DNA of 64,000 nt from Oopsacas minuta (Eukaryota; Animalia; Porifera), in assembly GCA_024704765.1 (NCBI GenBank), contig JAKMXF010000017.1, forward strand, positions 23,292 to 87,291. The letters run 5' to 3'. Below are positions 2,063 through 34,023 of the stretch, piece after piece. The translations under genes and the position numbers were made by a program. The notes beneath the pieces were generated by a model that worked only from the letters and a program-made list of their open reading frames with translations, was not told the DNA's origin and ran no database searches. How positions within the stretch are numbered: position 1 is the stretch's first letter; each line of letters opens with the position of its first letter.

Positions 2063-2070
2063 TTGAATCT

Positions 2071-4993: not shown

Positions 4994-5202
4994 TAATACT
5001 CATATATGGTCATTTTTCAGATTATGCAATAATCTTGATTGATATGGTTTATAATTCGAACTGTAACGGAAAAAATAATTTGTTGGACTGATGTGTTTGG
5101 GATACGTGCGAGAGTTTCAATGGAAAAACATCGTTCGAATTAACGGGTATTTAAATTACAAGTGGTCGACTATAGTAGGCTATGATTTACAAATTTACAT
5201 TA

Positions 5203-6204
5203 CTATAATAATGTCCAAGAACTTACCAGAGTGGGTACCATTTTCATTCTTTGTCTACGCAAGTTCTTAACTACATCGAAAATATTAATGGTATTCCTCG
5301 AGGTCATTTCTTTGACTGAGTTCAATGCTGTCATTATTATCCCAGTCTTAGAAATACCATCAGGACAATGTATTATGATTGGTATGTAAGGAGAATCTTT
5401 TTTCTGTTTGACTATTCTATTTAAGAGTGTTACAACCCATGCCATGTCACTCACTGTACAATCTTCATTCCAAATTGGGGATACACAGTGAATAAATGAG
5501 TGCTCTTTTCCTTCCACAGTATTCTTCAATGATATTTCTTGTTTCACAAATGCAGTAGTTTCAGTACAGCTGATTAAATTGGATTCAAATGGTTGGCATA
5601 TCAGAGGCTCATCCTTCTTTGGCCAATAACACATACGATTAGAGACTCCAGTGAGAATCTTGGCTCTCTCCTGTCTAGTAGTCAGCATTATCACCATACT
5701 AGCTTTGGTTTGAAATATCATCTGTAGGAAATCTTGTTTCGTTTTGTCAGTTGGATGTATAGTTGCAATGTATTCGTAATTTTCAAGCCAGCTGGCATTA
5801 ATATAATTACATTTAAAGTATTGAGATTCCAGTATAACTCTATTTTCATCAGGAAACAGGATATTTTTATGGCTAACGTGCTCCCTGAATTTTGTATATT
5901 CTGATTCTGAGAGAACATTCTTAGTTTGCTCATTTAACTCTTTGAATTCGACAAAGAACTTTGAATCGTTTCCAATTCCTGAATCTACATAAAGTTTGTA
6001 AGTATTTGGGAAATCTCTAGCAGAAATAGATTTGCTTGGAAGTGTATTTTCTTTTATAACAGAGCTCATTGGGGTGTATCCTTCATCAGAATTACTTCTA
6101 TCCATTCTGACATAATCTCTGTCTCCTGTAACCTGTATTTGTTTTGTTCTACTCTGACTAGAAATAGGTGGTCCTAAATTAGAATAGTAGGGATTTACAA
6201 CTGA
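5203..6204 (-). pseudogene. D2-type (catalytically degenerate) PTP domain of receptor gene A, in frame with the tail but behind a TGA
   Basis: Aligns to the D1-D2 linker and D2 of gene B (NTYKLY..., YINASW, HCPDGISKTG, IFDVVKNLRRQRMKMV); frame is open from 6204; GTAAGT donor after 'MVPTL' implies a further unlocated 3' exon. Confidence 0.75.
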
Positions 6205-9200
6205 TCACGTTTCTGTTTCCAAAACAATCGAAGCTTCGTCAATTGTCATATATTCTTGATTTTGAATTTCACCAAGTTCAATGTATTCTTTATCTCTTAA
6301 ATTAGCCTCTGACGAAATTGGTAATTCTGAATATCCATCAGCACTTGTTTGAATTTTACGTGGTTTCTTGGATGGAAGTTGTTTTTTGGTAGATTTTACA
6401 GAATCATCTTTGACTTCTTGATATCTTCTTCGCCTCATAAAAAATATTATCACAATTATTGGTACCATTACTATAATGAGAATAATTATTGTAACAACGA
6501 TAAGCAATACTATGATAATAGTAATAATGATTAAGCTGTTGTTTGATGTTTCATTGATGTGCATTTTTGTGACATTAGGCATTAGAGTTCTCGTTGAAGG
6601 CACTGTTGGTATATCTACCTCAATATGCACACTAGCTGTAATGTATTGTACTTCTGAAGCTGTTTCTCTTACCAACATGTAGATTCCTTCATTCTCTTCA
6701 GATAATACTGGAATATTGTATGGGAGGGTAGTTATGATAGTTAGCTTGTTTTGATTGATAAAATGTATCATCAAGCATTGACTACAGATGAAAGTAACAT
6801 TCTCAGTATTTGATCGAATGGTTATTCGTTCTGGAGATGGAAACATTGGATTGTTAGCATCGCTAAAAGTATTGCTGTATCCTTCATAGCTGATTGTTAG
6901 AGTAGCAGTGTCTAAGACATTTGGTAAAAGTACATAAAACTTGTAATTTTGTGTGATAAAACAATCTCTATTAGCAGGGTAAACTCCGGCAGGTTTGATG
7001 AAATCATTATTTTGGTGTTTGCATGGATTTTTTAATTCTAATTATTTTTTATCTAATCAGATAACGAATCTAAGATTCCAAACGAATATGAGTAAAGTGA
7101 AAAATGAATATTGTGGAGAATTGAATTTTGCCTAAAAATTTTGTCTAAAAGATGAAACGAGATTTAATATCCCTCAACCTTATTATATACTGTGGAACCT
7201 CATTAATTCCATTTCAGGATAGGACAAACAAATATTCACATAAAATCAGGTCCCAAAAATGGTTATTCAATTAATATTACTCCGGTTGAAACGAAAACCA
7301 GATAAGGCGAAGAAATATTGATCGTCCGTTGGTGTTCGTATTAACGAGGCGCCACTGTTTATAACTCTTATTTTATGAAAATTTACATTTCCTTATATCT
7401 CCTGACTTTAGCAACGCTGTTAATTGTACGGGTTTGATTGGAGCATAACTAACGAGCAAACGAAGTACTCTATCAGACTAAATCCTGAGTTAGAAATTTC
7501 AAATGCAATAGATTCATTCAGGACTTGTCAGGTTTATGTTTGCCCATGTACCATATAGAAATACGTAGATAGTTAGGCTAGGAGAACTGTTTTCCAGGTG
7601 ATGGTTCAAATATTTGAGATGCTCTTATAACTGGTGTATTCTTATAAGTGTTACCCACTAGCACTCGTGATAACAATATTTGTACATCTATATTATTAAA
7701 TCTCAATTGTTGTCTGTCTGTTTGTCTGTTTGTTTGTACGTTGTCAAGGAAAAGATTTATGGTATGCACTTTTGAAATTGTCGCATAACTACGTATTATC
7801 GTGTTTGTTAAGGAAACATAATTCAATAAAACTTCAGTAAATATATCGAATATGCGGAATCCGATTTTCACACTTTTGAATTATTCACATGTAAATTTAT
7901 TGTTGTTTTTATGAATATAAAGTAACAAATTTCAAAATTGTGGTAGAAACATGCTTTCAACGACTATACTGGAGTATTCAAGTATGGTGAGTCCAAATAT
8001 GGTATTGTAAACGTTATGTGGATATACCTCGAGGTGCAATTCGCCGAGTTCATCGCAAGGCGACAAGCCAAAGGCTCGTTATAATTCAAATTTTGTATTA
8101 TAATAAAATATCAAATTACAGTCTATGCAGACGTAATTATCACTGAATTAAATCAGTGGATTATTGAGACAATAAATTATACTAAATAATTCATTTTAGA
8201 AAAGAAATTTTGAAACTGTATGTAATACTCGTGTTAGATATATGAAAGTGTATAAATCAATTTAGAAAAGCACTGAGATCAAGGCTGTAGTCTGCACAGA
8301 AAACTTAGAAAGTTGGATAAAATTATATTACTAATAGTAACAAAAAATTAAAATATCTGTAAACCGAAATGTATATTCTGAGATAAAATAAAAATTGTTT
8401 CTGATTGAAAAGACAAATACCAGATGGACTAATTAATCCCCCTCTTCCATGCCCTCGTCTCCCAATGGTATGGATTAGTTTTGCTGAGGGAGAGAGTACG
8501 TATCTTGATTTTGTGATAGGAATAATCGTTAATGAGAAATTCCCTGCTGGATCCAAACAGAAGAAGACTACGTTATAAACCATAGCAGATCAATCATGAG
8601 AAACACACGAGTTTATCAGGTATCCACTTCTCGAGTAGAAGAGGACACATTTTGGACTGAAGTCTAGCACTACAATGCTGTTTGGAGTTACTTTTACATC
8701 TTTAGGAGACCTCAGCTGTTGAGAACAGAAACAATTTATGAATTTTAGTTCATCTGAGTAAATACAAACTCTGTTATTGTTACTATCAGCTGCATACACG
8801 TCTCCGTTATAGTCTGTACAGAGTCCACGTGGCCACTTTAACTCTCCCTCTCCTGATAACTTGGATATCGGTCTTCGCTACCTTGAAATCACTGAATTGG
8901 AACAAAGCACAGAGACAGTCCGTAACGAAGACGTGATCTTCTGTTACTGCTATACCCCAGGGATATTTGAATTCGCCTTGTCCAAAATTAGTGACTAAAT
9001 ATCCTTCAAAAGTAACAACTTGTATACGACAGTCGCCAAAATCAGCAATGTATATCAACTGATTAGGTTCATATAAGCTAGACCTCTTGCATCTTATAGT
9101 TCGTTATTAGCTCTCCCTTCCTTCCCTACAGCTATGACAGACTGCTTCTTAAGAGTGTAGTCTAGTTCCCATTCTTTCGCCTCAGTAGACTACGAGCATT

Positions 9201-12200
9201 CTTCGATTGATGTTCCCCATTTCGTTTATTAGAGTTCAGTTTGTTAGAAACAATATTAACTAATACAAACTCTATTTTATACTTGCGTAACTTCAGAATA
9301 CGAATTGATTCAATGATTGCTATGGTAGCCCAAAATTATGAGATATTAAAATGTACTATGACATGCGTCAATAGATTTTGGAATTTTTAGTACAGCTCCT
9401 ATAGGGAGATGCACTAATGGCATGGACGACAATTTCACAGATTTATCATATGATTAATCATATTTTCACACTTTCTTTGCATATTAATCCAAATCATCTA
9501 GAGATTTCGTTTGAACTATTCACGGGTAATCGAGTATGTAGATTTAAAATTTAAATATTCTTCTAACAAACTACTTTAATAAACAAATGGGCAACAAATA
9601 AATCAATGAATTCAGAAGCTACTCGTAGGTCTGTTGAAGTGAAAGAATGGAAGTTGGACTACTCTCTCAAGAAGCAGCCTGTCATAGCTGTAGGAAAGAG
9701 ACGGAGAGCTAACAACAAACTAAAATATGCTAGAGTTCTAGCTTTACATGAACTTAATCAGCTGAGGGTAACTGTAGCATACATGTTTTTACATTCGAGG
9801 GACAGTTCGTCATTAATTTTGGATAAGACATACTCAAGATCCATTGGTATTGCAGTAACAGAAGATCACGTTTTAATTACAGACTCTGATCCAATTCTGT
9901 GATTTCAAGGTAGCGAAGATTGGTACCAGAGGATCTGAGAGGGAGAGTTTAAGTGTCCTGCATGACTCTGTACATACTATAACGGAGACGTGTATGTAGC
10001 TGATGATAGCAATAACAGAGTTTTTATTTACTCAGAAGAACTTAAATTCCTAAATTCTTTGGGTTCTCATTCGTTGATCATATTCAACAAATTTTCCTTA
10101 AAATAGTGTTGTCTTCAGTTCTACTTTATGTCTAGCACACAGATGCAAACCTAGCGGCTCATATGTCACCAAGGAGTGAAATTTCGTCCAAAAAGGCATG
10201 AAATATATTTAGGATCGTGAAAATCTGTCAGACTCACGAGTTTGCAGTGAGAGTTGACATCTTTACACACGTTTTTGTATGTACAAACCGTAAAACAAAA
10301 GATTCGCTAGGCCAAATGCATCTCGATATTTTATATTATAACAGGGTTTCTCAACTTGAGGTCCTATGACCAAACTTAGAAACAATTAGGCCACTAAGAG
10401 ATTTTACATCAAATTCTGGCAAAATTGTTCTTCTGTGGTCATTTTGAGCAAACTTAACTAAACATGAGTACTTGACCAACCATGACCAAACGTGGCCAAC
10501 GATGACCAATCCTAGCTTAAGAGAACCATAGTCGAAGACATTTCTATTTTTTGAGACGAATGCATGCCCGAGAATGACAGTAGGAATGATGAAATCCATA
10601 CTGAATGCGTCATTGGGATTAAATATAGCAAGGATATTAGAAATCGATGATGGGTCCGTTATCGGGATTCCCACGACATGCTCTTCCAGCAAATTTTTTG
10701 ACTTTGTAGTAGTCAAAGAGCCGAACCAACCCGTTCTCAATCAAGCAGTGTTTCCCGAGAGGAAATTTGGCCAGACGAATCCAAAATATGGCTGCTTTCA
10801 GAGTTCATGGTTTGATAATGTATTATGATGCGAATGGCTTTACTGGGAAATCAAAAATGACGAAGTTTATTCTATTAAATGCAGAAATGTGAATGCTCTT
10901 GGCCAATCTAGCTCATATATATCCATCGATACTGGAAAATCAACTTCGTAGAAACGAAAGCAGACTAAATTTGAAATAGTTTTTGAGATACTGCTACGCA
11001 GGACCACTCTGAAAAGTGATACAGCGATACGGCGCTCGCCGTACCTGCCCTACTAAGTGTGCCGCCCCTGGGTATGGTACTCACTGTAACCATGTTTGCC
11101 ATCCCTGATATCGTGCTTTAGTGATCCTGTTACTCCGTTCTATTATTTTCAAAGTCTTTCGTTTCTATTAGGATGGAATAAATTGTTTCTTTTACTCATC
11201 ATCTATATGAACCTATATTGACAAGGGTTTTGAGGTACGGCGCTCCCCGTACAACTTTTCAGCGCCTGGTGTGCCTCCTTCCATAGTTGTAATATTCGGT
11301 TTATATTTAAAATTCTCAAATCACCGTCTGTGCAGACTCAAATTTCATCAAATTAATTTCAGTGGATTGTTGAAACTATATTATTCTATATTATTCTATA
11401 TTATTCTATATTATTCTATATTATTCTATATTATTCTATATTATTCTATATTATTCTATATTATTCTATATTATTCTACTAAATATACATTTTAGCAAAA
11501 GAATTTCAAATTATTTATACATTGTGACCTCTAAAAGCGGGGAATGGGGAATGGGGAATGGGCATACTTTAGAGAAATTATGCCTTACTCCATTGAATTT
11601 ACCTCTATAGGAAGGAATTCTACGAAAAATTTACTTGAATAATCAAATTTGTGCTAAATTTTGAAAAAAACATTTTTATCGCTATGATGAATTGAAATTT
11701 TTGGGTTCCTGAGAAAAATTTCAAATCTCAGGTGGACATCTAGAGGTCACTACGAGTGATATGCCCTGGACAAAAGAGGTGATTTATCACAAAGTAAGTT
11801 TCCATTCGGCACATCATTTATAGTCAACAGTCAAATTAGTGCATTTTAGTGCTCGAGGAAAACATTAAGGGAACAGAAATCGTTCAAACTTGAATACGAC
11901 TTTGAATAAATACATTTTTGTTACCTCTAATAGCTATTTGTAGACTTCCTAACAGAGTTACAGGACTCATTCTATAGAAACAACTCAATGTCTGTACACC
12001 TGCTCCAACATCAGAGAATATTATACTCAAATCTATAGGATTTGTATACTCATTGCTATATTCTTGACTATCACCATTAGATATTGTGTCTGTAGTCCAG
12101 CGTAACGAGCTGTCTGAAATATCAGATACAGAGTAGTATAGCATTGAAGTAGTAGATCCAACAGTGTAGTCAATCTGTTGTGATGGATTATCAAGACTTG

Positions 12201-15200
12201 TTACTGAGACTACAAATTCACACATAGTTACTATAGGTGAATCTACACATTTGAGAAATATTTGTTAACCAAACTTACTCAAAGAACTGCTGTTTACAAC
12301 ATATACAGAGTATACACTATCTGTATTGATGATACAGCTATAATATCCATGTTGATTAGAACTAATATTCAAACTACTGATCCCTGTATTAGTAGATAAT
12401 CTTGAGAGAGAAGTCTTATTAATTTCCTCGTTATCTATCAGAGATCTGTAGTACCACTCTACTCCATAAATTGGATTTGAAACAGTACAGCTTATCGTTA
12501 TAGTATCCTCAGTAGGTGATAGTACTGATCCGTTCTGTATTATTCCTTCTGTCAATGTTGAGATGAAATTGGGAGTTGTATAACCTGAGAATTGTGATAT
12601 AAGAAAACAAGAAACTATGCTGTTGTTGTAGAAATTACACTAGAGTTGGGTTCGCTTATTAGCAACTATCTTATAGGAATAAATGTATATTTGCAATATA
12701 GTTTCAGATTCCGAGTGTTGACTTTGTACAACTTATGTTCTTCTAAATTTCGCATTAGCAACTGTATGAGAACTAAAGCACAATGTTGTTAATAGGCAAA
12801 CTCCACTGTAACTTCAAAGAATATTAGAAGAATTTCCCAGAAATAAATATGGAATACTATGTAGATCCCTTATATGTAATTTATATTATTTATGACAGAT
12901 TACCAATTTACCATAGCTATTTGCAAGTAAGTAACTGTGATTCTATAACAATTTAATTTTAGACTATGAACGACCACCACCCCCTCAGGGCGAGAATTCA
13001 ATCACAGGATTCAGGCTATCAATCAGGTAGCAAGTCTGTAAGTAAGAATGTAGTGAGTAATTGAAATATTAACAAAACGGAAAAATTCTCAAGTAGCAAG
13101 TTAATACTTGTGTATTATTTGAAATCCATACTTGCTAACTGCCCATATTTGGGTGGGACTTCCCAAATTTTCAGACATGTATTGGGGGGCCAATGAAGCT
13201 AATGTCCCGCCATAACTTGTCAAAACCTTAATTGTTCCGATTTTTTAGTCCAGTCTAATACTAGTATGCTACGTCCCGCGAGGTCCCGAAAAATCACTAA
13301 TTTCGTCCCGCAGTTTTCTTCACTCAGGTTGTCAAGTATGGAAATTCTTTTTCCTGCACCGACTATACAAGATATAGTCGCCCAGTATTGCTAGATTCTC
13401 AAATTACAAGTTTACTATCTAAATTATATTTCTAATACCTGTGATATAATTATGACTTCTCCTACAAATGAAATCATTCAATCTGTTAGCACAGTTAACA
13501 TTCTTCCACTTTCCATCAGTCTTCATTACAACACAACTTCCTGAATTAAAGTCCTTAGGTGCATTTGATAAATAGTTTGTGTAGCTTACTTGTGTTCCAT
13601 CAATCCAGTTAAAACTCTCATCTCCATTCTCATCATACAATCCAATCCAGTATTTGCTGATTGTATCAGGGACAATAGTGTATAGGAAGTTATTCACTCG
13701 TTCTGAGGGAATACTAGTCAAGTCACCACCCCATATAGTACAAATATTCTGAGCACCAAACCAGCTGATCCCATCAGTATGCTCAAATGCTCTATAACAA
13801 GTCTCTTCATATATGAGATCACATCCATTAGAGGTAGCTATTTTCAATAAAACATGGTTTACTGACAGTAAATATTTATAGATTTAATGAATTCACAACT
13901 ACCAATTCAATATATCATAGAAAATTAACTTCCACGGAATTAACGCGAATTGTTAAATTGGCGTGAATTCATTGTCATTGGCGTTTTCATGACATTAATT
14001 CCTGTACAGTTTATTTCGATCAGTTATAATTCCAATACAGTCCTAACATGAATATGCAAAATCACAAACTAAATATTTACCATCTGCAACTGGGTTGTGT
14101 TCGATAATGCCTTCTCCAATTCGCGTTAATTCATGGAGCATTGATTTCCCATAATAAATTTTGAGGTAGTTTCCAACTTGATTTAGCAAATTACAAACCA
14201 TGTACATAATACAATAGTATCAGTCAAAGTATTCATATATTCAATATTACTTACCTAACTTCTGACAATAGTAAGAGAATACAGCTGCATCACAATTTCT
14301 ATCATGCCATCCATTTGACAATCCATTCAGTCTGTTGTATCTAAAACTAACACAATCACTTTCTACTGTCTCTGCACGAGGATACACTTCTGATTCTGGA
14401 GATGTAGCAAATTGTCTGTAATTATTGTCGCTACCATCTACCCATACAAATAGATTCGAGTTAGTATTAGCCTCATTAGTTCTGTCATTCAAACCTATCC
14501 AACTAGCAAAATATAAATTAATATCTGTTAGATAATACAATAATGTATCTTCTTGTTGAGACTTGATTGTAGTGAGATTTCCTCCCCAACTGATACAGCT
14601 ATCTTGAGCTGCTGTCCAAGATATTTTAGGAAAAGTAGTGAATATTGCAAATGTAGAATCATCATATGTAAGATTCCTCATCACGTCTAATTCTATAACA
14701 GAATATAATTAAAGATCTTTCTAACGGGGAAATTTGGTTGTGCAAACAAATATCCAAACAACATAATTGCTGCTGGAATAATAAATGCAGCAATCTAGCT
14801 AGGTTTGCTGAATGATTTGTAAATAGCTAAATTAGTTGCTGATTAGAGACCTGCCACGCTTTAATTGGTCTGGGATAGTAATAGCTGGTGTCTCTATTAT
14901 TCATACATGTACAATACTTACATCAATACTGTACACAACTTCACATAATTACCTGTAATATCATTTGAGTCTCTTTTACAAATAAAATCATTCATATTAC
15001 CACAGTCATAATTATTCCATTTTCCATCAGTCTCCATTGCAATACAACTCATTGAGTTAAAGTCATTAGGTGCATTTGATACATAGTTTGTGTATCTTAC
15101 TTGTGTTCCATCAATCCAGTTAAAACTCTCATCTCCATTGTCATCATACAATCCAATCCAGTATTTATTAGTTGTATCAAGGACAATAGTGTATAGGAAG

Positions 15201-19271: not shown

Positions 19272-20181
19272 TGTGAATTAATCAAATCATAAACTAATAA
19301 AAATACAATTAATCTTCATACATTTTATTTATACTAGCAATTACTCAGTTGAGTAGGTTAGAAAATCCATAATTTAGAGAGTAATATGATATATATGTTC
19401 ATATTTCTGCTTATTGACTTGACACATTACTACTATTTAGATCACTTGACTTAATACAAAATTAATACAAAATAATAACATTTTCCAATATAAAATATTC
19501 AAAAAGGAGCAAAAAGTAATACCATATATCACAAATGAAAGTCTCTATCAAAACAAAGCCTAATTCTAAATGAGCTTTCTGTAACAAAAGGAAAAGAGAA
19601 GAAGTGGGATCTAAAGTTCATTCATTTAACTTTAAAACAGTACTCATTCATCAGTGAGAAGCAAGAGACGAAGTGAGACTAGAATAAAGTATACGAGTAA
19701 ATATACAAAATAGTAATCTTGAAAATATATACATATGCTAGAGAAAACCATAAGAGAGTTACAATATTAATTTGTTATAATTATGGTTTGAAATTTGCAA
19801 ATATTTTTAATGTCAGTTCCTGCACCTTCTATGTACTCGCTAGAATGTAAGGTGTGTAATTATTAGAAAACCAAATTGTTGTAAGTTTCAAATTTTTCTA
19901 TATTAAATTCGTAAAAAGAAATTTGACTATTCCATACTTGCCAACCTGAGTGATGAAAAAAGCGGGCAGGAAGTACATATTTTGCTGGACATCCTGGAAC
20001 GTGGTATATTTAGATAATTACATAAGACATGACTATAAAAGTGGGACAATTAAGTTATTTAGCAAGTTTTGGCGGGACATCAACCCCGCAAAAATCGGGA
20101 CAGTTAGAACAATAATACAACTCATTGGTGTTTTCGCATATATTTATTTCAATCCGACCTATATCATTTATAAATTGTAAA

Positions 20182-23100
20182 TTACATGCAACTAACCAGA
20201 TTTGTCATTGTATTCATCCTTTCACTTCTCAACTTCTTAACAATATGGAATATATCAATAGTACCCTTATTTCTGCTATCCTTGATAGCTTTATAGACTG
20301 TATAGAGAACACAACTCTTGCCAGCTCCATCTTCACAGTGGATTATGATTGGGACATTTGGAGAATGTTGTCGGAATTCAAATATTGTTTGTAGCAGGAT
20401 AATGGTACATTCAAGATTTGGTTCTTCATTTTCATTCCAATTTGTTGCGATAATTTGGGTAAATGATCGACTACTGTTATCAATAGTATGATGAAGATTA
20501 ATAGTGTTACGAATGAATACAGACTTTTCGCTGTTTATACATGTCAGAACGAAAGGTTCGGCTTGTAGAGGTTTCCCTGGAGTAGGCCAGTATACTTTAC
20601 GGTTAGATTTATCTTGTTCGATTTGTCTAAGCTTCAACGGAGAAGAAAGCATTACCACCAAAATGGGTTCCATTTGGTAGATGAGTTGATAGAAATCTCG
20701 AAGAGTATCTGTGGTTGGATGAATTGTGATAATTATTTCTCCCAAATCTAGTGAAGTTGCGTTGATGTAGTCTCCTTCCCAGGGCGGGGAACTTAGTCCT
20801 ACTCTATTACTGTCAGATGGTAGGACATGTTTTACCGGATTTTTATCTTTGTTAATTTCTAGGAGAGCATCCTTACAGACTGGAATAAATCCTTTTTCGC
20901 ACTGATAGTTGAGTTCACTGAATTGTTGATAAAACAAGGATACATAGCCTTCATCTTCAGATTGCATGTATAATTTGTATGTGTTCATGAATTCTTTAGT
21001 ACTGACAGAAGTGCTCCCAAGCAAAATTTCCAACACACATAGATAAATGAATTTGTATTGAGCAAATGTTTGTACCATCTGTGGACGATATTCTCTCATT
21101 TCGTGGACGATTCTGTAAATACTAATTGGCTTTGTTTGTTGGATAGTAGATAAAAGATTGTATAATGTCAGGAATGTTCCTGTACGGCCTACACCAGCAG
21201 AACAATGTACCAAAATAGGAGCCTTTGTTTTGACCAAGCTTTCCTGAACATTGGTTACAAACAGCAATAATTCATCATAGAGTAGTGGGACATCATGATC
21301 AGGCCATGCGGTGAAATGAAAGTGTTTAATACATACTGTACCTCCAGGAAAGTGAACTTTCATGATCTTTATGGCATACCCGGTAAAAATATCTTCTTTC
21401 TCAAGAGTTATGTCATAAGGTTCAATGACTAACGTTGAACCTATACTCACAGGAAAATAGGTCTCGCATTTCCTGCGTCCGGACTCTACTAAGTTTGTAA
21501 CCATTACAATGTTTACGATTTCATTCTCAATTATCATCTGCCAGAAACTTTGGAGAGTGTTTTCCTTTGGTCCTTGTGCAGCAATGAATTTCTCTTTGAC
21601 ATACACTCCAGGAATGTGACTAGCATTTATGTAATCTGTTGCATCGTGATCAGTATGCTGCAAAATAACGCGATGTTTATCATATGGATAGATCAATTTG
21701 AAACGATTTTTTGTTTTGTTTTCTTCTGTTCTTGCTGTTGTGCACGGATACCTATGTTCTTTTCCACCCAAACTTTCATATTCTTCTTGTAGCAATGTTT
21801 CCCGCTTCCAAAGCGTATTCATATGAGTTTTGAATATATCTATAGGAATAGGTAGCATTCTTGGATCCATAACCTCTGACACTTCTTCGTAATTTATTGT
21901 TTCTGTAAAACTTTTTTGTTGTATATCTTCCCGTGGTTGACTCTCTGGAGTCTTTTCTTTTGGCAACAATTCGCCTAGTACCATGTATCCTTCATCAAGT
22001 CCTGCTGTAGTATCGTCTTCAATGCTATCATCTTCTATTCGTTTTAGTCTTATTGTACTTCTTTTGCTTCTTTTATCGTTTTGATTAAACTTTTTTGAAT
22101 CTCTTCTCTTATACATTATTAACCAGACAACGAAGATAACTATTATTATCAGCATCAGCATTGCTATAATTATGACAATTGGTGCTACTATGTAAACTAC
22201 TAACATACTATTTTCAATAGCAGGTACTGTTGGTATATCTACCTCAATATACACACTAGCTGTAATGTATTGTACTCCTGAAGCTGTTTCTCTTACCAAC
22301 ATGTAGATTCCTTCATTCTCTTCAGATAATACTGGAATATTGTATGGGAGGGTAGTTATGTTAGTTAGCTTGTTTTGATTGATAAAATGTATCATCAAGC
22401 ATTGACTACAGATGAAAGTAACATTCTCAGCATTTGATCGAATGGTTATTCGTTCTGGAGATGGAAACATTGGATTGTTAGCATCGCTAAAAGTATTGCT
22501 GTATCCTTCATAGCTGATTGTTAGAGTAGCAGTGTCTAAAATAATGGTAATTAATTTTGAGTTTGATCTTACCAATTGGTGACCACCTTTGTTAGCATTA
22601 GTTTAATAGCAAGGGTGATTTTTCAGGATATTTTGAAAAGTGAACTTTCGATGCTATATAGCGTATTCTCATACTAAATGGTGTTCAACGCCCGTTAGAC
22701 AAACCCTGTTAAATTATACGAATGATAAAAAAATTAGTGTTAGTACTTAATAATAATTGCATATTTGTGATATATCATATAAATCTGATCATACAATCGT
22801 ACGGATTTCTGAGAAGATATATTGGAGTTAGCAACTGTAATCACTTGATATGGATAAAACACTTTTCAAAGTTTGGAATTGAACCCTAAACAATACTGCA
22901 ATCGGAGATAAGGTACCCCTAATCTTTGAATGGAGTTGTACCTCATTGGTTCGAATTATTTAAACGAGCATGCTTCCTTCTCTACACTATTCGTTCCTTT
23001 ATATTCTTTTCTAATAATATTACAACACTTCATTTACTAATGGAATGCATTACCTTCTTCTTACAATTTTCAAGGGAGCTCACTCCAATTGTGCTCCCAT

Positions 23101-26100
23101 ATTATTCTTCCAGAGAATTGTATTCTAGATTGTGAGCATCCGTTTGTATTGAATTGGACTATTGTACACACCAAAAATGCTCAGAAATAGAAACTTAAAA
23201 TCATATATATATATCAACAGTAATATTTTGTTACCTCTTATAGCTATTTGAAGACTTCCTAACAGAGTTACAGGACTCATTCTATAGAAACAACTCAATG
23301 TCTGTACACCTGCTCCAACATCAGAGAATATTATACTCAAATCTATAGGATTTGTATACTCATTGCTATATTCTTGAGTATCACCATTAGATATTGTGTC
23401 TGTAGTCCAGCGTAACGAGCTGTCTGAAATATCAGATACAGAGTAGTATAGCATTGAAGTAGTAGATCCAACAGTGTAGTCAATCTGTTGTGATGGATTA
23501 TCAAGACTTGTTACTGAGACTACAAATTCACACATAGTTACTATAGGTGAATCTACACATCTTGAGAAATATTTGTTAACCAAACTTACTCAAATAACTG
23601 CTGTTTACAACATATACAGAGTATACACTATCTGTATTGATGATACAGCTATAATATCCATGTTGATTAGAACTAATATTCAAGCTACTGATCCCTGTAT
23701 CAGTAGATAATCTTGAGAGAGAAGTCTTATTAATTTCCTCGTTATCTATCAGAGATCTGTAGTACCACTCTACTCCATAAATTGGATTTGAAACAGTACA
23801 GCTTATCGTTATAGCATCTTCAGTAGGTGATAGTACTGATCCGTTCTGTATTATTCCTTCTGTCAATGTTGAGATGAAATTGGGAGTTGTATAACCTGAG
23901 AATTTTGGTTTATAGAATACCATATTACCCCCAAATAATAGCCTGAGCGATTATTCACTTCAAGCCCACTTGAAAGGTAAGTTTCGATGTTATAAACACG
24001 AATTTGATATAACCATAACTATGTGCTTGCATTATGTCCATTTATTCATGGATATCTAGATTCTAGAATAATGATATCCATTATTTATCCTAACAAACAG
24101 TAGATTGATCAAAATGTAGGGGAAATATTTTCAAATACCACCATACGTATAAGGGAACGGTGTTCCCCCTAAGTACACCCCTGACTTTAATCAGTTATTA
24201 TTATTTTGGAGCCTCAGGGGGATTATTCGAGGTAATTCGGTACGTAAATTATCCTTACATTACATATATCTTATATTTTGTAGGAAATTTGTGGTTCTGT
24301 AGTAGCAATTACAGGATACGTTGATAAAGGTCAGAAGAATAGGACCAGAAATATGTATGAATGGTTCTATAATTTTGAGGGTATTTAAATTTTTATATAG
24401 AGCTTGACTACAATATCTCTTATTTATATTTAAATTTACTTGCCGCGCGACAGCTTAGGGCCTCAGGTTAGCTTAAATATTAAACAGCTACATTTCTTGA
24501 TGCTTTCAGCCGCTACACGAGGGGATATATTCAGCCACGTGGGGGTTAATATTTATGGAAATTTTAATGTATATTATCCATGCTCCGTGCAAATTCCATT
24601 TAATGGACTTCTGTGGTCATTAAAAGGAATTACGGAGCATGGAATACTGGAATTCGTATTCCGTGAATTCGAGGTACGTTTTTCCGAATCTATTCTGTCG
24701 CATAGCGACCAATAACACTATAAAATTTTGCTGTTAATTAATACTTTAAGCTAACTTGGAGCACTAAGCTGTCGCGCAGCAACCTAGCAAGCGAAGCGCA
24801 CATATATTAAATGTGTTTTATAGTAAGATTTTTGATATTCTTTAGTGAGGAAATTTATTGGTCAACAAGAAAAATAAGATGAGTAACCAATATAAATACA
24901 CAGAAAATGATCTAGTGGTTAGTAAACACCCTCCACAAACCTGCACTGTTTTTGCAAGTTAGAAATCCTTAATATGCTGCCTATATATATTTCTAATACC
25001 TGTGATATAATTATGACTTCTCCTACAAATGAAATTATTCAATCTGTTAGCACAGTTAACATTCTTCCACTTTCCATCAGTCTTCATTACAACACAACTT
25101 CCTGAATTAAAGTCCTTAGGTGCATTTGATAAATAGTTTGTGTAGCTTACTTGTGTTCCATCAATCCAGTTAAAACTCTCATCTCCATTCTCATCATACA
25201 ATCCAATCCAGTATTTGCTGATTGTATCAGGGACAATAGTGTATAGGAAGTTATTCACTCGTTCTGAGGGAATACTAGTCAAGTCACCACCCCATACACT
25301 ACAAGTAGACTGAGCATCAAACCAACTGATCCCATCAGTATGCTCAAATGCTCTATAACAAGTCTCTTCATATATGAGATCACATCCATTAGAGGTAGCT
25401 ATTTTCAATAAAACATGGTTTACTGACAGTAAATATTTATAGATTTAATGAATTCATAACTACCAATTCAATATATCATAGAAAATTAACTTCCACGGAA
25501 TTAAAACGAATTGTTAAATTGGCGTGAATTCATTGTCATTGGCGTTTTCATGACATTAATTCCTGTACAGTTTATTTCGATCAGTTATAATTCCAATACA
25601 GTCCTAACATGAATTTGCAAAACCACAAACTAAATATTTGCCATCTGCAACTGGGTTGTGTTCGATAATTCCTTCTCCAATTCGCGTTAATTCATGGAGC
25701 ATTGATTTCCCATAATACATTTTGAGGTAGTTTCCAACTTGATTTAGCAAATTACAAACCATGTACATAATACAATAGTATAAGTCAAAGTATTCATATA
25801 TTCAATATTACTTACCTAACTTCTGACAATAGTAAGAGAATACAGCTGCATCACAATTTCTATCATGCCATCCATTTGACAATCCATTCAGTCTGTTGTA
25901 TCTAAAACTAACACAATCACTTTCTACTGTCTCTGCACGAGGATACACTTCTGATTCTGGAGATGTAGCAAATTGTCTGTAATTATTGTCGTTACCATCT
26001 ACCCATACAAATAGATTCGAGTTAGTATTAGCCTCATTAGTTCTGTCATTCAAACCTATCCAACTAGCAAAATATAAATTAATATCTGTTAGATAATACA

Positions 26101-29100
26101 ATAATGTATCTTCTTGTTGAGACTTGATTGTAGTGAGATTTCCTCCCCAACTGATACAGCTATCTTGAGCTGCTGTCCAAGATATTTTAGGAAAAGTAGT
26201 GAATATTGCAAATGTAGAATCATCATATGTAAGATTCCTCATCACGTCTAATTCTATAACAGAATATAATTAAAGATCATTCTAACAGGGAAATTTGGTT
26301 GTGCAAACAAATATCCAAACAACATAATTGCTGCTGGAATAATAAATGCAGCAATCTAGCTAGGTTTGCTGAATGATTTGTAAATAGCTAAATTAGTTGC
26401 TGATTAGAGACCTGCCACGCTTTAATTGGTCTGGCATAGTAATATCTGGTGTCTCTATTATTCATACATGTACAATACTTACATCAATACTGTACACAAC
26501 TACACATAATTACCTGTAATATCATTTGAGTCTCTTTTACAAATAAAATCATTCATATTATCACAGTCATAATTATTCCATTTTCCATCAGTCTCCATTG
26601 CAATACAACTCATTGAATTAAAGTTATTAGGCGCATTTGATACATAGTTTGTGTAGCTTACTTGTGTTCCATCAATCCAGTTAAAACTCTCATCTCCATT
26701 GTCATCATACAATCCAATCCAGTATTTATTAGTTGTATCAAGGACAATAGTGTATAGGAAGTTATTCATTCGTTCTGATGGAACACTAGTCAAATCACCA
26801 CCCCATACACTACAAGTAGACTGAGCATCAAACCAACTGATTCCATCATCAGATTCTTCAAACACTTGATAACAAAATCCTTCATATATTATATCACATC
26901 CATTGGAAGTAGCTGGAAGATGGAGTAAAATTATATGTATATCATATTAGATTTCTAGAAAAGGATGATTGTTAGCATTTTTATTCAAATTTATTTTCTG
27001 TAATAGGTACCACATTATAATTACATTAGGGGCGGTTCAAACGTTAAGTAATGTAAATTCCATAAATATTTACCTCCCAATCCTGTGTCACGCTTTTTTA
27101 CCGTTTTGTTATGCAAAAAGAATGGGGATGTCACATTTCGCATACCACCCCCTCCCCTTGTAGCGCTAGGTAAAGTGGAACCTGGAGCACGCTCCATTTT
27201 TTAAGGAGGGAACACACTGGCACTCGTTCCTATTTAATTGCAAACAATTTACAAATTTCATCTGGCATTCTGCATAAAATTCAAGTATTTTTGCTATAAA
27301 AAGTGAATGAAGGGACACTTTTGTATAAATCACAAATTATTGAAATGGTTTGAAGTTGCATAAACAGTAATTTCTCGAATATTAAATTCCTGATCACTTA
27401 AAATGCAAATCTAATGTAAATCTAAAAGAAGGAATTGGAGCCCAATTGGAGTACGCTCCAAATTTGAGCAACAGTTAATACTCTACTAGTTTTGGAATGG
27501 TTTACTATCAATTCTACTCACCAAACTTCTGACAATAGTAAGAGAATACAGCTGCATCACAATTTCTATCATGCCATCCATTTGACAATCCATTCAGTCT
27601 GTTGTATCTAAAACTAACACAATCACTTTCTTCTGTCTCTGCACGAGGATATACCTCTGATTCTGGAGATGTAGCAAATTGTCTGTAATTATTGTCGTTA
27701 CCATCTACCCATACAAATAGATTCGAGTTAGTATTAGCCTCATTAGTTCTGTCATTCAAACCTATCCAACTAGCAAAATATGGATCTATATCTGTTAGAT
27801 AATACAATAATGTATCTTCTTGTTGAGATTTGATTGTAGTGAGATTTCCTCCCCAACTGATACAGCTATCTTGAGCTGCTGTCCAAGATATTTTAGGAAA
27901 AGTAGTGAATATTGCAAATGTAGAATCATCATATGTAAGTTCTCTCAAAAGACCATAAACTATGATAGACGGATAAGTAGAAAATATCGAATTTGTGTGT
28001 AATTTGTAGTTGAAAACATGGAATACATTATTGACTATCCTCTTAGGTAGTGTTTGCAATCCCCAAGTGTATTTTCTAATCCTGAGATTAAGGATTGATT
28101 CGATGCTCAGTCCCGGGGATATTGCACTAAATACTATATGCTTACACTAGTATAATTAAATCAATTGCAAAAATCTAATTTAATCTATACGCGCCTTTGG
28201 CTCGTCGCTTTGCGATGAACTCGGCGCATTGCGCCTCGAGATTTCCATTATTCTCCAAATTGACGGCCCCTTTGAGTATTATAATATAGATATATATATA
28301 TAGAACAATGTAATTCACAAATATACGTATATAGCATAATATTATTGAATTATTTTGTAAGATCAACACCCTTCGTTGCCGTTGAGAGAAAGTATCTATG
28401 TAAATTTTGAGATTTTGTAAATTTGTTTCCTTTATATTCATAAAAAATAAATTTACATATAAGAACCTTGAAAATTCGAAATTCGGATTTCAGCGTTAGT
28501 TACCCCTGTGTAGCCGTTTAGAACAAGCCTATTCATAAAAACAACAATATTTTACATATCAACGGACAAACAAATAGCCAAACAACAATTGAGATTTAGT
28601 AATATAGATGCCGTTTACAATATCATATTTGGACACAGCATACTCGATTACCCCAATATGGTCGTTGAAAGTATGATTCTACCTCATTTTTGAAAATTGT
28701 TTACTTTATGTACCTGAAAGTAAACAAATATTCACAAAATGTTGTTTACAATATCATATTAGCACTCAGCATACACGATTACCTCAGCATAACCATTGAA
28801 AACATGTTTCTACACCAATTTTTTGTATTGAATTCCGGGATCCAATCCAAAAGAAACTGTATCTGGATCCCGGAATACCGGAATTGCAAACACTATTCTT
28901 ATGAGTCGCTCAACGTTACTTAACGCAAAACTCACCAAAATTTGACCTCAGTATTACGCTTTTCGCAATACGAAATGAATGGGACTGTCACGCTATTTAC
29001 ACTACCCTTCTAGGTAAGGTTTGACGTTTCAATAAGTATTCAGAGATACTCAGAATTTCATAATCTAAAACTATATTTTGCATTCTCTTATTCTGTTCTA

Positions 29101-30638
29101 TGCAGCTATTGTAAAAGGTACATATCTAACCACTTCACTTATGCGCGCCGTGTCGTAAGCTTTCGTCCTGTTTCCCTTAGTAAGGACCGTAATTTAGCCT
29201 GTAAATCTGACACTAAAAGCTCAAGGTAAACTCAGGGTAGACCTATGGTGCCGCTCGGACCTTTCCTTGTCACATGGTGGGTTATGACGCCTATAACTCC
29301 ACTTGACACTCTGGACGAAGAATAAACAAATACATTACAGGTGAAAATAATGAGTAAAGACTCTTTTTGAATAGCTGTTTGTTGCAAGAAATTATAATGA
29401 CGAAATTTCCGAATATTATCTGAGACAACATTTTCATGCGACAGAATTTCGTAAAAAACTTTCTGCCATTATTTGAAAAGCTAGAAATTAAGTTCTTGAT
29501 AGAAATACCTGCAATGAAATTTGAGTTCCTCCTGCATATATAATTGTTGATATCATCACCACAGTCATAATTATTCCATTTTCCATCAGTTTCCATTGTA
29601 ATACAACTCATTGAGTTAAAGTCATTAGGTGCATTTGATACATAGTTTGTGTATCTTACTTGTGTTCCATCAATCCAGTTAAAACTCTCATCTCCATTGT
29701 CATCATACAATCCAATCCAGTATTTACTAGTTGGATCAGGGACAATAGTGTACAGGAAGTTATTCACTCGCTTTAAGGGCACACTAGTCAAGTCACCACC
29801 CCATACACTACAAGTAGACTGAGCATCATACCAGCTGATTCCTTCAGATGCTGTAAATATTTGATAGCAGAAGTTTTCATATATTAAATCACATCCATTT
29901 GAGATTCCTATAGAATAGTAATTATAGTTAATGCATGAAGTGTTATACATTGTAATGAGAGTCCCAGATGATGGCTGGTAGTTTATTGAATAGGTATTCT
30001 GTATATTGTATATTGAAGTTATTAAGAATTCAATTTACCTGGTCTTTGACAGAAGTAGGAAAATACAGTTGAGCCATCACCACAATGTCTATCATGCCAC
30101 CCATTCGATAATCCTTGTCCTCTTCTGTATCTAAAACTAACACAATCAGAATTGTCATTAGTAGCACGAGGATATGCTTCTTCTTCTGGAGCTGTAGCAA
30201 ATTGTCTGTAGGTACTATCACTACCATCTTCCCACCTAAAACTATTCGCGTCAGTACCAGCTTCATTCCCCATTCCTCTATCATTCAAACCTATCCAACT
30301 AGCAAAATATTCATTAATATTTGTTAGATAATAGAATAATGTATCTTCTTGTTTAGACTTGATTGTAGCGAGATTTCCTCCCCAGTTCTTACAAACATCT
30401 CTAGCATCTGTCCATGATATATGAGTATCATTTGAACCTACTATTGTAGTGAAGATTGCAAAAGTAGAGTTGTTGAATGTTATTTCTCTGACTGGATCTT
30501 GTGCTAATAATATTTTTTAGTTATCAAACATTCATGAACACATACATACGGTTCAAGTTTTAATATACCTGTTTGTATCTGAATGAAAGAACATATGATT
30601 ACACAGATTATTCTCACTGCGTATAACCAAGTTTTCAT
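20182..30638 (-). CDS. Receptor gene B: signal peptide - 6x C-type lectin - 3x Ig-like - TM - tandem PTP (D1 intact, D2 degenerate) receptor tyrosine phosphatase
   Basis: Exon 1 30638-30569 (MKTWLYAVRIICVIICSFIQIQT), CTL exons 30503-24990, Ig exons 23895-23175, large exon from 22535; D1 has KNRF, DYINAS, FIAAQGP, WPDHDVP, HCSAGVGRTG, QMVQT; D2 has HCEDGAGKS; GT donor after 'MTNL' so the last exon(s) lie below 20197 (not firmly placed). Confidence 0.88.
24439..24783. mobile_element. MITE with ~40-bp TIRs in an intron of gene B
   Basis: cttgccgcgcgacagcttagggcctcaggttagcttaaa vs tttaagctaacttggagcactaagctgtcgcgcagcaac. Confidence 0.7.
28180..28830 (+). mobile_element. HINE/Lep1-like Helitron repeat plus a partial tandem copy
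   Basis: 5' gcctttggctcgtcgctttgcgatgaactcggcg, 3' end gagatttagtaatatagat at 28609, then repeated internal block 28620-28830. Confidence 0.6.
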
Positions 30639-33986: not shown

Positions 33987-34023
33987 CCTTTCTGATATTT
34001 TATACCAGGGCCGTAGCTAGGGG

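What the first reader, a model, noticed from the sequence alone, without database searches (positions are those of the whole stretch)
5203..30638. Candidate paired immune receptors: same lectin/Ig ectodomain wired to an ITAM tail (A) or to an ITIM-like motif plus active phosphatase (B)
Seen: A and B are nearly identical from the first CTL exon to '...VDIPTVP' (~6600 / ~22221), then stalk, TM and tail become unalignable. A: DKEYIELGEIQNQEYMTI (6294-6241) fits D/E-x2-YxxL-x7-YxxI exactly, with YSEL upstream and no D1 domain. B: INYEEV (21897-21880) fits I-x-Y-x-x-V, followed by D1 with intact WPD and HCSAGVGRTG. Established: vertebrate paired receptors (KIR, LILR, Siglec-11/16) and Hydractinia Alr genes couple similar ectodomains to opposing ITAM/ITIM signalling. 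Inference: an independently evolved activating/inhibitory pair in which the inhibitory member carries its own phosphatase, perhaps for symbiont, pathogen or self recognition.
Basis: partly seen in the sequence, partly recalled or inferred. Interest (0 to 1): 0.85.

Follow-up and report, generated by a model that had tools for sequence, protein, structure and literature searches.

The report
Paired lectin receptors in glass sponge
Two neighbouring glass-sponge genes encode receptors whose outer parts are kept almost identical by gene conversion; one ends in a working-looking tyrosine phosphatase, the other in a tyrosine-motif tail plus a dead phosphatase domain, which resembles vertebrate paired immune receptors, but function and expression are untested.

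Summary
The window is Oopsacas minuta scaffold JAKMXF010000017.1.

The reading of A as an "ITAM tail" receptor is incomplete:
- A's tail ORF ends at one TGA (6207-6205) that is in frame with a 326-codon D2-like pseudophosphatase ORF.
- Contigs of two other read sets of this species, and of a ~7% diverged relative, carry CGA (Arg) there. The stop is therefore a derived allele of the reference.
- Intact A belongs to a family of at least 100 hexactinellid ORFs: Ig, TM, several conserved YxxL/I/M motifs (including the ITAM-spaced pair), then a dead PTP domain.

B is an R4-like D1+D2 phosphatase. Its juxtamembrane Tyr is conserved, but the strict ITIM flanks are not.

A and B are old paralogues:
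- Their long introns are unalignable and their last PTP-like domains are 40% identical.
- Their 1,144-residue mature ectodomains are 96.8% identical.
- A second hexactinellid assembly holds a probably orthologous pair with its own homogenised ectodomain. This points to concerted evolution by gene conversion.

The paired-receptor architecture is supported. Opposing activating and inhibitory roles, expression and ligand are untested.

The scan had already noted the same system at another locus of this genome (s1-313088).

The parts
19622..30638 (-). Gene B: 11-exon model, 1,861 codons with no internal stop. It encodes a signal peptide, 6 C-type lectin domains, 3 Ig-like domains, a TM segment and an R4-like tandem phosphatase (D1+D2).
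   Evidence: Stop-free spliced model built from phase-1 GT-AG sites; Pfam domains; homologues are RPTP alpha/epsilon-like.
3805..19271 (-). Gene A: 11-exon model colinear with B, 1,643 codons with one internal TGA at codon 1299. It has the same ectodomain, its own TM, a multi-tyrosine juxtamembrane segment and a single D2-like pseudophosphatase domain.
   Evidence: Model; splice sites at the 5,013-nt intron are intact; the window is 100% identical to GCA_024704765.1 JAKMXF010000017.1, where A is annotated as two genes.
6598..18285 (-). A's share of the homogenised ectodomain. Five blocks (17282-18285, 16596-17045, 13425-15364, 11916-12608, 6598-6915) are 97.1-98.7% identical to B 22222-30505. 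The four long introns between the blocks are unalignable.
   Evidence: blastn; block edges fall at exon boundaries; mature ectodomain protein identity is 1107/1144.
6205..6207 (-). TGA stop of the reference allele. Other read sets show CGA (Arg).
   Evidence: read-laying table 3: + strand A>G at 6207 in the only X2 and X3 contigs there and in X5; X1 matches the reference. Codon effect computed.
6241..6294 (-). ITAM-spaced pair D-x2-YIEL-x7-YMTI.
   Evidence: Family conservation of the two Tyr is 78% and 91%. The nearest relative P0004 keeps YIVL-x7-YMTI.
6067..6333 (-). Full tyrosine-motif segment: YSEL (6333-6322), the ITAM-like pair, then after the stop YSNL (within 6189-6175), YVRM (6114-6103) and YTPM (6078-6067).
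   Evidence: Coordinates. Column conservation in 76 family members: 78, 78, 91, 82, 36 and 87% Tyr.
6439..6534 (-). A's transmembrane segment, unrelated to B's.
   Evidence: Hydrophobic run located; no DNA similarity below 6598.
5227..6105 (-). A's D2-like pseudophosphatase domain with its linker. The P-loop is HCPDGISKTG (Arg replaced by Lys), WPD is WNED, Q-loop Gln is Pro, and the KNRY loop is missing. It ends at the donor CTG|GTAAGT.
   Evidence: Pfam Y_phosphatase 3e-40. 36% identical to B's D2 including the D1-D2 linker, against 26% to D1. Motif alignment.
3805..3861 (-). A's terminal exon, encoding the last helix of the PTP fold and the stop.
   Evidence: Matches the end of NCBI model P0001. 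Homologous to B's terminal exon at 62% nt.
6174..6272 (-). 99-nt intron predicted in the public annotation. It skips the stop and would also delete YMTI and YSNL; it is probably an annotation work-round.
   Evidence: P0001 joins ...EYIELG to PPISSQ.... Paralogues are colinear coding sequence across this stretch.
6912..11924 (-). A's 5,013-nt intron between the Ig2 and Ig3 exons (B's is 699 nt). It holds degenerate NHL-repeat ORFs and repeats.
   Evidence: Its length exceeds the 5,000-nt intron limit used for RNA mapping in the genome paper, which may explain the split annotation.
21880..21897 (-). B's ITIM-pattern motif INYEEV. A second conserved motif, GYMVL, lies at 21990-21976.
   Evidence: The Tyr is conserved as Y-[EQ]-[EN]-[IVA] across about 70 homologues, and GYMxL is conserved too.
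21049..21711 (-). B's D1 catalytic motifs: KNRF (21711-21700), WPD (21306-21298), HCSAGVGRTG (21207-21178), QTFAQYKF (21072-21049).
20197..20860 (-). B's D2 pseudophosphatase domain (HCEDGAGKSC at 20340-20311; WNEN at 20439-20428).

Best explanation
A and B are an old, head-to-tail pair of receptor genes of the glass sponge Oopsacas minuta. B's stop and A's start codon are about 350 bp apart.

Shown:
- Both encode the same 1,144-residue mature ectodomain: six non-canonical C-type lectin domains and three Ig-like domains.
- Repeated gene conversion keeps that ectodomain about 97-98% identical, right up to the last residues before the membrane.
- Everything from the TM onward comes from two different hexactinellid endodomain families.
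- B carries an R4-type tandem phosphatase whose D1 looks catalytically competent.
- A carries a juxtamembrane segment with five to six conserved YxxL/I/M motifs, one pair at ITAM spacing, followed by a D2-derived domain that has lost four catalytic elements.
- The reference allele of A has a recent CGA-to-TGA nonsense change just after the ITAM-like pair. Other reads of the species and a related taxon keep Arg.

Inferred:
- Because both receptors should see the same ligand, one delivers phosphatase activity and the other a phosphorylatable docking scaffold to the same contact site.
- This gives two different, probably antagonistic or mutually regulating, phosphotyrosine outputs.
For: Identity and architecture:
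- Species and scaffold.
- Colinear stop-free models, with one TGA in A.
- Domains.
- Catalytic-motif comparison.
- In-frame stop.

Allele status of the stop:
- X2, X3 and X5 contigs read CGA at 6207-6205.
- X5 also shares the non-reference state at 5868 and 5794, so the reference states are derived.
- The genome paper used a different adult for each library.

Family context:
- 101 hits share the HC-x5-K loop, and many carry YxxL/I pairs.
- Tyr conservation is 78-91%, including two motifs downstream of the stop.

Old pair with young ectodomains:
- The long introns show no similarity.
- The D2 domains are 58% nt identical, the terminal exons 62% and the signal exons 75%.
- In assembly ERZ25069837, the B-like P0103 and the A-like P0004 share 93-95% DNA identity across the ectodomain, up to just before the TM.
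- A clusters with P0004 as its nearest relative, and B with P0102, P0103 and P0104. Both clades have SH-aLRT 100.
- Membrane-proximal Ig identity is 95% (A-B) and 90% (P0004-P0103) within a genome, against 60-65% between genomes.
- Endodomain identity is 68-70% between genomes, against 33-40% within a pair.
- Further cross-family pairs share 80-92% identical membrane-proximal domains.
Against: - No RNA evidence was obtained. All runs found behave as DNA, covering intergenic sequence evenly.
- The reference allele is truncated. A has a 5-kb repeat-laden intron and is annotated as two genes.
- Orthology of the second pair rests on quick trees, and the taxon of the ENA assemblies is unknown. P0103 and P0004 lie on different contigs.
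- About 51 non-synonymous against 24 synonymous differences between the two ectodomains gives no sign of strong purifying selection on the few sites that differ.
- The lectin domains lack the EPN/QPD and WND sugar-binding motifs (read off the translations), so the ligand class is open.
- Phosphorylation, SH2 readers and phosphatase activity are all untested.
Confidence: 0.7

Rival explanations
1. Cooperating rather than opposing pair. B acts like CD45 or RPTP-alpha: its conserved Y-E-E-I/V motif docks a Src-family kinase SH2 domain and D1 removes the kinase's inhibitory phosphate. The activated kinase then phosphorylates the YxxL/I motifs of the co-clustered A. On this view both members are parts of one activating module.
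For: - B is R4-like by its best named hits (RPTP epsilon/alpha).
- The conserved motif consensus is Y-[EQ]-[EN]-[IVA]. From my own knowledge this resembles the pYEEI Src-SH2 ligand.
- The strict ITIM flanks are not conserved.
- The same ectodomain would bring A and B together on one ligand.
Against: - No Src-family kinase, SH2 binding or substrate was tested.
- The motif lies in the juxtamembrane region, not at the C-terminus as in RPTP-alpha.
- Some homologues do fit ITIM or ITSM patterns.
Confidence: 0.25
2. A is an activating receptor whose functional product is the ITAM-only truncated protein, and B is its ITIM-plus-phosphatase inhibitory partner.
For: - The reference allele would give exactly such a 1,298-residue protein ending 11 residues after YMTI.
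- The ITAM pattern is rare by chance (0.7-1.7%) and conserved.
Against: - The stop is absent from X2, X3 and X5 contigs and from all 76 aligned family members.
- 326 codons after the stop remain open and conserved, 68% identical to P0004.
- The stop lies far upstream of the last intron, so nonsense-mediated decay could plausibly remove this transcript (my inference).
Confidence: 0.07
3. A is a decaying duplicate, a unitary pseudogene in the making. The ectodomain identity simply reflects passive conversion from B without function.
For: - Nonsense allele in the reference assembly.
- 5-kb intron with transposon debris.
- Split annotation.
- Near-neutral ratio of non-synonymous to synonymous differences between A and B.
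Against: - The intact CGA allele is seen in other reads.
- All splice sites are intact.
- There is no other stop or frameshift in 1,643 codons.
- The Tyr motifs and pseudophosphatase are conserved relative to P0004, P0008 and P0010.
- The same A-type/B-type pairing exists in another assembly.
Confidence: 0.1
4. A young exon-shuffling event: a recent duplicate of B's ectodomain exons was joined to the tail of an unrelated family member, with no long-term maintenance by conversion.
For: - 98% identity in the blocks.
- All lectin and Ig exons are phase 1-1 and so shuffle freely.
Against: - The four long introns and the signal exon are not young (no similarity, or 75%), which a recent segmental copy would not produce.
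- The similarity is cut into five blocks that end at exon borders.
- A probably orthologous pair exists in another genome, with its own homogenised ectodomain.
Confidence: 0.08

Closest known systems
Vertebrate paired receptors homogenised by gene conversion (Siglec-11/16, Siglec-5/14, KIR, LILR, SIRP, PILR)
   Same: Neighbouring genes carry near-identical ligand-binding ectodomains and different signalling ends. Ectodomain identity within a species exceeds that between species, which indicates concerted evolution. The break lies at the stalk/TM boundary.
   Different: - Vertebrate activating members have short tails and borrow ITAMs from adaptors through a charged TM residue, and inhibitory members carry ITIMs that recruit SHP phosphatases.
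- Here the phosphatase is built into one member. The other carries its own multi-tyrosine segment plus a dead phosphatase domain.
- The ectodomain is a lectin/Ig array, and the animal is a sponge.
R4 receptor tyrosine phosphatases (RPTP-alpha/epsilon) and CD45
   Same: B has TM, juxtamembrane, an active-looking D1 and an inactive D2. Its best named sequence matches are RPTP epsilon and alpha.
   Different: - RPTP-alpha and epsilon have tiny ectodomains, whereas B has six lectin and three Ig-like domains.
- The KNRY tyrosine is Phe in B.
- B's docking tyrosines are juxtamembrane rather than C-terminal.
Single-domain pseudophosphatase receptors (PTPRN/IA-2, PTPRN2) and regulatory D2 domains of RPTPs
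   Same: A has one membrane-tethered PTP fold with substituted catalytic residues. It is closer to D2 than to D1 and retains the D1-D2 linker. An Atlas feature search with its nearest relative P0004 ranks a PTPRN-like cluster second (a lead only).
   Different: A is not related to IA-2 by descent as far as tested. It is a hexactinellid expansion with an ITAM-like multi-tyrosine juxtamembrane segment and a lectin/Ig ectodomain.
Hydractinia Alr allorecognition family (PMC9546547)
   Same: Invertebrate clustered receptors with Ig-like ectodomains whose tails carry ITAM or ITIM patterns. The same motif definitions were used here.
   Different: Alr proteins have no phosphatase domains and no lectin domains. 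Matched pairs homogenised by conversion are not their defining feature.
ITAM and hemITAM C-type lectin receptors (Dectin-1, CLEC-2; FcR-gamma-coupled Dectin-2/Mincle)
   Same: Lectin-fold ectodomain coupled to YxxL/I signalling.
   Different: The vertebrate receptors are type II proteins with one CTLD. A is type I with six CTLDs that lack the canonical sugar-binding motifs.

Membership tests
Paired receptors | Two or more clustered genes with closely related ectodomains | tested here: met
   A and B are adjacent on one strand. Mature ectodomain identity is 1107/1144 residues, and the DNA blocks are 97.1-98.7% identical.
Paired receptors | Different signalling endodomains from the TM onward | tested here: met
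   There is no DNA similarity below 6598/22222 apart from 58% in the last PTP-like domain. A lacks D1.
Paired receptors | Ectodomain similarity maintained by gene conversion (within-species identity greater than between-species identity, while the tails are orthologous) | tested here: met
   Caveats: quick trees, and the relative's taxon is unknown.
Paired receptors | Opposite (activating versus inhibitory) signalling | not testable with these tools
   Only motif and catalytic-residue inference is available.
Paired receptors | Co-expression on the same cells | tested here: inconclusive
   The runs that hold A and B behave as DNA, so no RNA data could be laid.
ITAM-bearing receptor | Cytoplasmic YxxL/I-x6-12-YxxL/I | tested here: met
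   YIEL-x7-YMTI at 6294-6241. It appears in 0.7-1.7% of shuffles and is conserved at 78% and 91% in the family.
ITAM-bearing receptor | Short signalling tail or adaptor without an enzymatic fold | tested here: not met
   In the intact allele and in all relatives the motif is followed by further Tyr motifs and a PTP-fold domain.
ITAM-bearing receptor | Phosphorylated motif bound by the tandem SH2 domains of a Syk-family kinase present in the genome | not tested
   The only lead is an unchecked scan note of a Syk-like kinase in this genome (s1-273678). A TULA/UBASH3 homologue of O. minuta is listed in PMC10253181.
ITIM-bearing inhibitory receptor | [I/L/V/S]-x-Y-x-x-[I/V/L] in the tail | tested here: inconclusive
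   B fits the pattern. One match is expected by chance in 10.6% of shuffles. The Tyr is conserved, but the -2 and +3 positions vary, for example PTYQEA and ITYEEA.
Classical tandem receptor tyrosine phosphatase | Signal peptide, TM, and D1 with intact WPD, HCX5R and Q loops, plus D2 | tested here: met
   B only. Enzyme activity was not tested, and the KNRY Tyr is Phe.
Pseudophosphatase (D2-type) | PTP fold with loss of the catalytic Arg, the WPD context and the Q-loop Gln | tested here: met
   A shows HC-x5-K, WNED, MVPT and no KNRY. The HC-x5-K loop is present in nearly all of the 101 family hits.
Canonical sugar-binding C-type lectin | EPN or QPD plus WND calcium/sugar site | tested here: not met
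   Read directly from the translations. Type-a domains have NAP...WKN or WNN, and type-b domains have SPE...WHD. Pfam Lectin_C is met.

The most novel reading that the evidence does not exclude
Glass sponges run a large, independently evolved paired-receptor system. Dozens of lectin/Ig ectodomains are each presented on two chassis: an active R4-type phosphatase, and an ITAM-like multi-tyrosine scaffold with a dead phosphatase domain. Gene conversion keeps each pair matched, and the tyrosine scaffold is read by tandem-SH2 proteins such as a Syk-like kinase. This would be a phosphotyrosine self/non-self or microbe-sensing circuit in one of the earliest-branching animal lineages.
Probability: 0.3. 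Interest if true: 0.9.

Novelty: new variant of a known kind. Interest (0 to 1): 0.7.

Why it matters
- Paired receptors with matched ectodomains and divergent signalling ends are regarded as a product of host-pathogen or self/non-self arms races in vertebrates.
- Finding the same genetic logic in a hexactinellid sponge would push this design principle towards the base of animals: an old pair, ectodomains homogenised by conversion, and recurrence across a family. It would also show a different wiring, with the phosphatase built in and the partner carrying an ITAM-like scaffold plus pseudophosphatase.
- It gives concrete, testable candidates for sponge recognition receptors. Neither hexactinellid genome paper in the library mentions tyrosine phosphatases or C-type lectins.
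- It flags two annotation problems in the public O. minuta gene set: A is split in two, and an intron was invented to skip a polymorphic stop.

Tried and rejected
- **RNA evidence.** Both run searches returned the same five runs. When laid, they cover intergenic DNA evenly and have contigs up to 107 kb, so they are DNA. Transcription, splicing and co-expression could not be tested.
- **A 35-nt mini-intron spanning the stop** (GT at the stop, AG at 6175-6174). It is out of frame, so I rejected it on reading.
- **Selenocysteine or another recoding signal.** No Rfam family, including SECIS, reaches threshold anywhere in the window. Relatives have Phe, Leu or Arg at the site.
- **RNA editing as the source of A>G at 6207.** It is on the wrong strand for A-to-I editing of a minus-strand transcript, and the runs are DNA.
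- **Haplotype or assembly duplicate.** I rejected this because the tails and long introns are unalignable and both A-specific and B-specific sequence occur in several read sets. Only X1 bridges the 6598 junction.
- **Search with the juxtamembrane segment alone**. It found only the closest relatives, so it does not show whether natural tail-only members exist.
- **Atlas search**. It gave only generic PTP clusters.
- **Literature.** Searches for the public name 'RyPTPR4a' and for paired pseudophosphatase receptors found nothing.
- **Syk or SHP in this genome.** I could not test their presence because no tool-provided query sequence was available.

Full report
**What the sequence is.**
- The region holds two multi-exon genes on the minus strand of an AT-rich animal genome.
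- A protein search with the open frame downstream of A's stop gave a 99% match to an NCBI protein of the glass sponge Oopsacas minuta.
- The locus fetched for that protein, GCA_024704765.1 scaffold JAKMXF010000017.1, is 100% identical to window 1-16846.

**Check of the observation.**
- blastn of the two halves gives five blocks of 97.1-98.7% identity: A 17282-18285, 16596-17045, 13425-15364, 11916-12608 and 6598-6915, against B 29502-30505, 27513-27962, 24986-26925, 23226-23920 and 22222-22539. Nothing else is alignable at normal sensitivity.
- The last block ends exactly after ...VDIPTVP.
- Pfam confirms Lectin_C in the lectin exons, two Y_phosphatase stretches in B and one in A. Ig hits are only sub-threshold.
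- I modelled the membrane-proximal domain from a 61-sequence alignment (pLDDT 91). It is a beta-sandwich whose best PDB matches are Ig-fold domains, but the matches are weak: TM about 0.5 and none at E <= 0.001.
- Phase-1 GT-AG sites give colinear 11-exon models. B has 1,861 codons with no internal stop. A has 1,643 codons with a single internal stop at codon 1299.
- The mature ectodomains are 1107/1144 residues identical.

- Translating 6950-4800 shows that the ITAM tail and the downstream 300-residue PTP-like ORF are in the same frame. They are separated by one TGA at 6207-6205.
- The downstream domain is 36% identical to B's D2, starting in the D1-D2 linker, and only 26% identical to D1.
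- Both genes end this exon at the same CTG|GTAAGT donor. Both have a homologous short terminal exon encoding the last helix of the fold.
- So A is a D1-less relative of a tandem phosphatase, not a tail-only receptor.

**The stop is an allele.**
- I laid four public runs on 2600-7100.
- All four cover intergenic DNA evenly and are evidently DNA, so they say nothing about transcription.
- X1 matches the assembly exactly.
- The only X2 and X3 contigs over the site, and the contig of X5 (another organism label, about 7% diverged), read G instead of A on the + strand at 6207. That makes the codon CGA (Arg).
- X5 shares the non-reference state at two further linked sites, so the reference states are the derived ones.
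[quoted passage not shown] This fits a polymorphism among individuals.
- Caveats: Logan contigs show presence, not absence, and I cannot tie the coded runs to that paper with certainty.

**Family context of A.**
- The search returned 101 proteins. Most are ORF calls from ENA metagenome-style assemblies, and a few are O. minuta models.
- They share one layout: an Ig-like domain, a TM, a juxtamembrane segment rich in YxxL/I, and one PTP-like domain whose P-loop is almost always HC-x-DG-x-SK, with Lys in place of the catalytic Arg.
- In an alignment of 76 members the Tyr columns are conserved as follows:

| A's motif | Tyr conserved | Position relative to the stop |
|---|---|---|
| YSEL | 78% | before |
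| YIEL | 78% | before |
| YMTI | 91% | before |
| YSNL | 82% | after |
| YTPM | 87% | after |

- The stop therefore interrupts a conserved signalling segment.
- The 99-nt intron in the public model (6272..6174), which removes YMTI, the stop and YSNL, is most simply a gene predictor's work-round.
- The motif alignment shows four catalytic losses in A's domain: Arg to Lys, WPD to WNED, Q-loop Gln to Pro, and no KNRY loop. B's D1 keeps WPD, HCSAGVGRTG and QTFAQYKF, with KNRF in place of KNRY.

**Family context of B.**
- B's juxtamembrane-plus-D1 region finds about 70 sponge homologues and then vertebrate RPTP epsilon and alpha.
- The Tyr of INYEEV is conserved with consensus Y-[EQ]-[EN]-[IVA]. 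An upstream GYMxL is conserved too.
- The ITIM-defining -2 and +3 positions vary, for example ITYEEA and PTYQEA.
- A single ITIM match appears in 10.6% of shuffles, against 0.7-1.7% for the ITAM pattern in A.
- The motif is therefore probably functional, but calling it an ITIM is not secure. From my own knowledge it equally recalls the pYEEI ligand of Src-family SH2 domains. R4 phosphatases and CD45 activate Src kinases.

**Old pair, young ectodomains.**
- With a sensitive blastn the four long introns show no similarity at all.
- The D2-type domains are 58% nt identical, the terminal exons 62% and the signal exons 75%.
- Block edges sit at exon borders.
- A recent segmental duplication cannot produce this pattern. 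Gene conversion between old paralogues can.
- In assembly ERZ25069837, the B-like P0103 (L003) and the A-like P0004 (L005) share 93-95% DNA identity through the ectodomain exons and several introns. This runs up to about 270 nt into the last big exon, just before the TM, and then becomes unalignable.
- In quick maximum-likelihood trees A falls in a four-member clade in which P0004 is its most similar member and P0008/P0010 its nearest by path. B falls with P0102, P0103 and P0104. Both clades have SH-aLRT 100.
- Identities:

| Comparison | Within a genome | Between genomes |
|---|---|---|
| Membrane-proximal Ig | 95% (A-B), 90% (P0004-P0103) | 60-65% |
| Last PTP-like domain | 33-40% | 68-70% |
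| Lectin exons (DNA) | 93-98% | 70-77% |

- This discordance is the signature of concerted evolution of the ectodomain in a pair that predates the split of the two taxa.
- More cross-family pairs with 80-92% identical membrane-proximal domains exist. In P0062/P0111 the identity runs through the TM and about ten cytoplasmic residues before the tails diverge.
- Caveats: the ENA assemblies are unnamed, P0103 and P0004 lie on different contigs, and the trees are quick ones.

**Differences between the two ectodomains.**
- About 51 non-synonymous and 24 synonymous substitutions fall in the open frames, close to a neutral ratio.
- They are clustered, for example 12 in 87 nt at 15361-15275 and 7 in 29 nt at 13764-13736.
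- In the second cluster B carries the version found in its other type-a lectin exons (the WF[DG]AQ... stretch in the translations). This suggests micro-conversion among repeats.

**How it most likely works.**
- Shown: there are two receptors with the same ectodomain. One has an apparently competent phosphatase. The other has a conserved array of tyrosine motifs and a dead phosphatase fold. The match is maintained by conversion.
- Inferred: a shared ligand brings phosphatase and phosphorylatable scaffold to the same site.
- Either B erases A's phosphotyrosines (opposing outputs), or B primes Src-like kinases that phosphorylate A (co-operating outputs).
- A's dead domain may bind or regulate D1 in trans, as D2 domains do in vertebrate RPTPs (my own knowledge).
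- The truncated reference allele would make an ITAM-only protein, or be lost to nonsense-mediated decay. There is no reason to think it is the normal form.

**Annotation notes.**
- The public annotation splits A into a 1,067-residue lectin protein and the 525-residue P0001.
- The intron between them is 5,013 nt, just above the 5,000-nt limit used for RNA mapping in the genome paper. The split may be technical.

**Relation to earlier notes of this scan.**
- The same system was noted and followed up at another locus of this genome (s1-313088).
- Several other notes describe lectin/Ig receptors with single pseudophosphatase domains.
- The notes on this stretch about 'old duplication, young exons' (s1-270265) and patchwork exchange among lectin exons (s1-270264) agree with my tests.
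- A note of a Syk-like kinase (s1-273678) is an untested lead.

**Verdict.**
- The sequence observation is real, but A's description was incomplete.
- The paired-receptor architecture is well supported. The activating-versus-inhibitory assignment and the immune role are not.
- Nothing like it turned up in the literature searches.

Noticed in passing
window 19272-19621: Only about 350 bp separate B's stop codon (19624-19622) from A's start codon (19271). Read-through or shared regulation of the two genes is conceivable.
   Followed up: no
window 8590-9058 (minus) and 35388-35936 (plus): A's 5-kb intron contains degenerate NHL-repeat ORFs resembling the NHL gene further along the window. Earlier scan notes place that gene in a composite hAT/RAG1-like unit at 33998-39145.
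   Followed up: no
window 3959-4109: A short stretch in A's last intron has a word depth of about 3,400-5,000 in all four runs, against about 50-170 nearby. Many loose ends occur at 4058 and 4096-4106. It is a high-copy repeat present in both organisms.
   Followed up: no
L003:19941-22283: In the relative's contig, a further gene downstream of the B-like P0103 (beyond a FLYWCH ORF) has lectin exons 95-97% identical to P0103's. These exons are only about 93% identical to those of the A-like gene in L005, so three receptors may share one ectodomain there.
   Followed up: partly
L001 (ENA ERZ25072730 ctg83158) and L004 (ERZ25071281 ctg49227): Tandem arrays mix D1+D2 genes and single-pseudophosphatase genes, each preceded by lectin exons. 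Neighbouring units in L001 are 87-94% identical over kilobases.
   Followed up: partly
window 46159-57129 (+), 57692-61981 (+), 40180-41310 (-), 31705-32856 (-), 668-2062 (-): Several very long intron-free ORFs flank the pair: 3,656 aa, a 1,429-aa helicase-like ORF, a 376-aa ORF, a 383-aa multi-pass membrane ORF, and a 464-aa MatE transporter (Pfam hit recorded). Only MatE has a tool-based name.
   Followed up: no
window 30503-25000 and 18283-13439: All six lectin exons are phase 1-1. They alternate between two lengths: type b is 465 nt for the first exon and 438 nt for the third and fifth, and type a is 399 nt. This layout allows in-frame exon exchange.
   Followed up: partly
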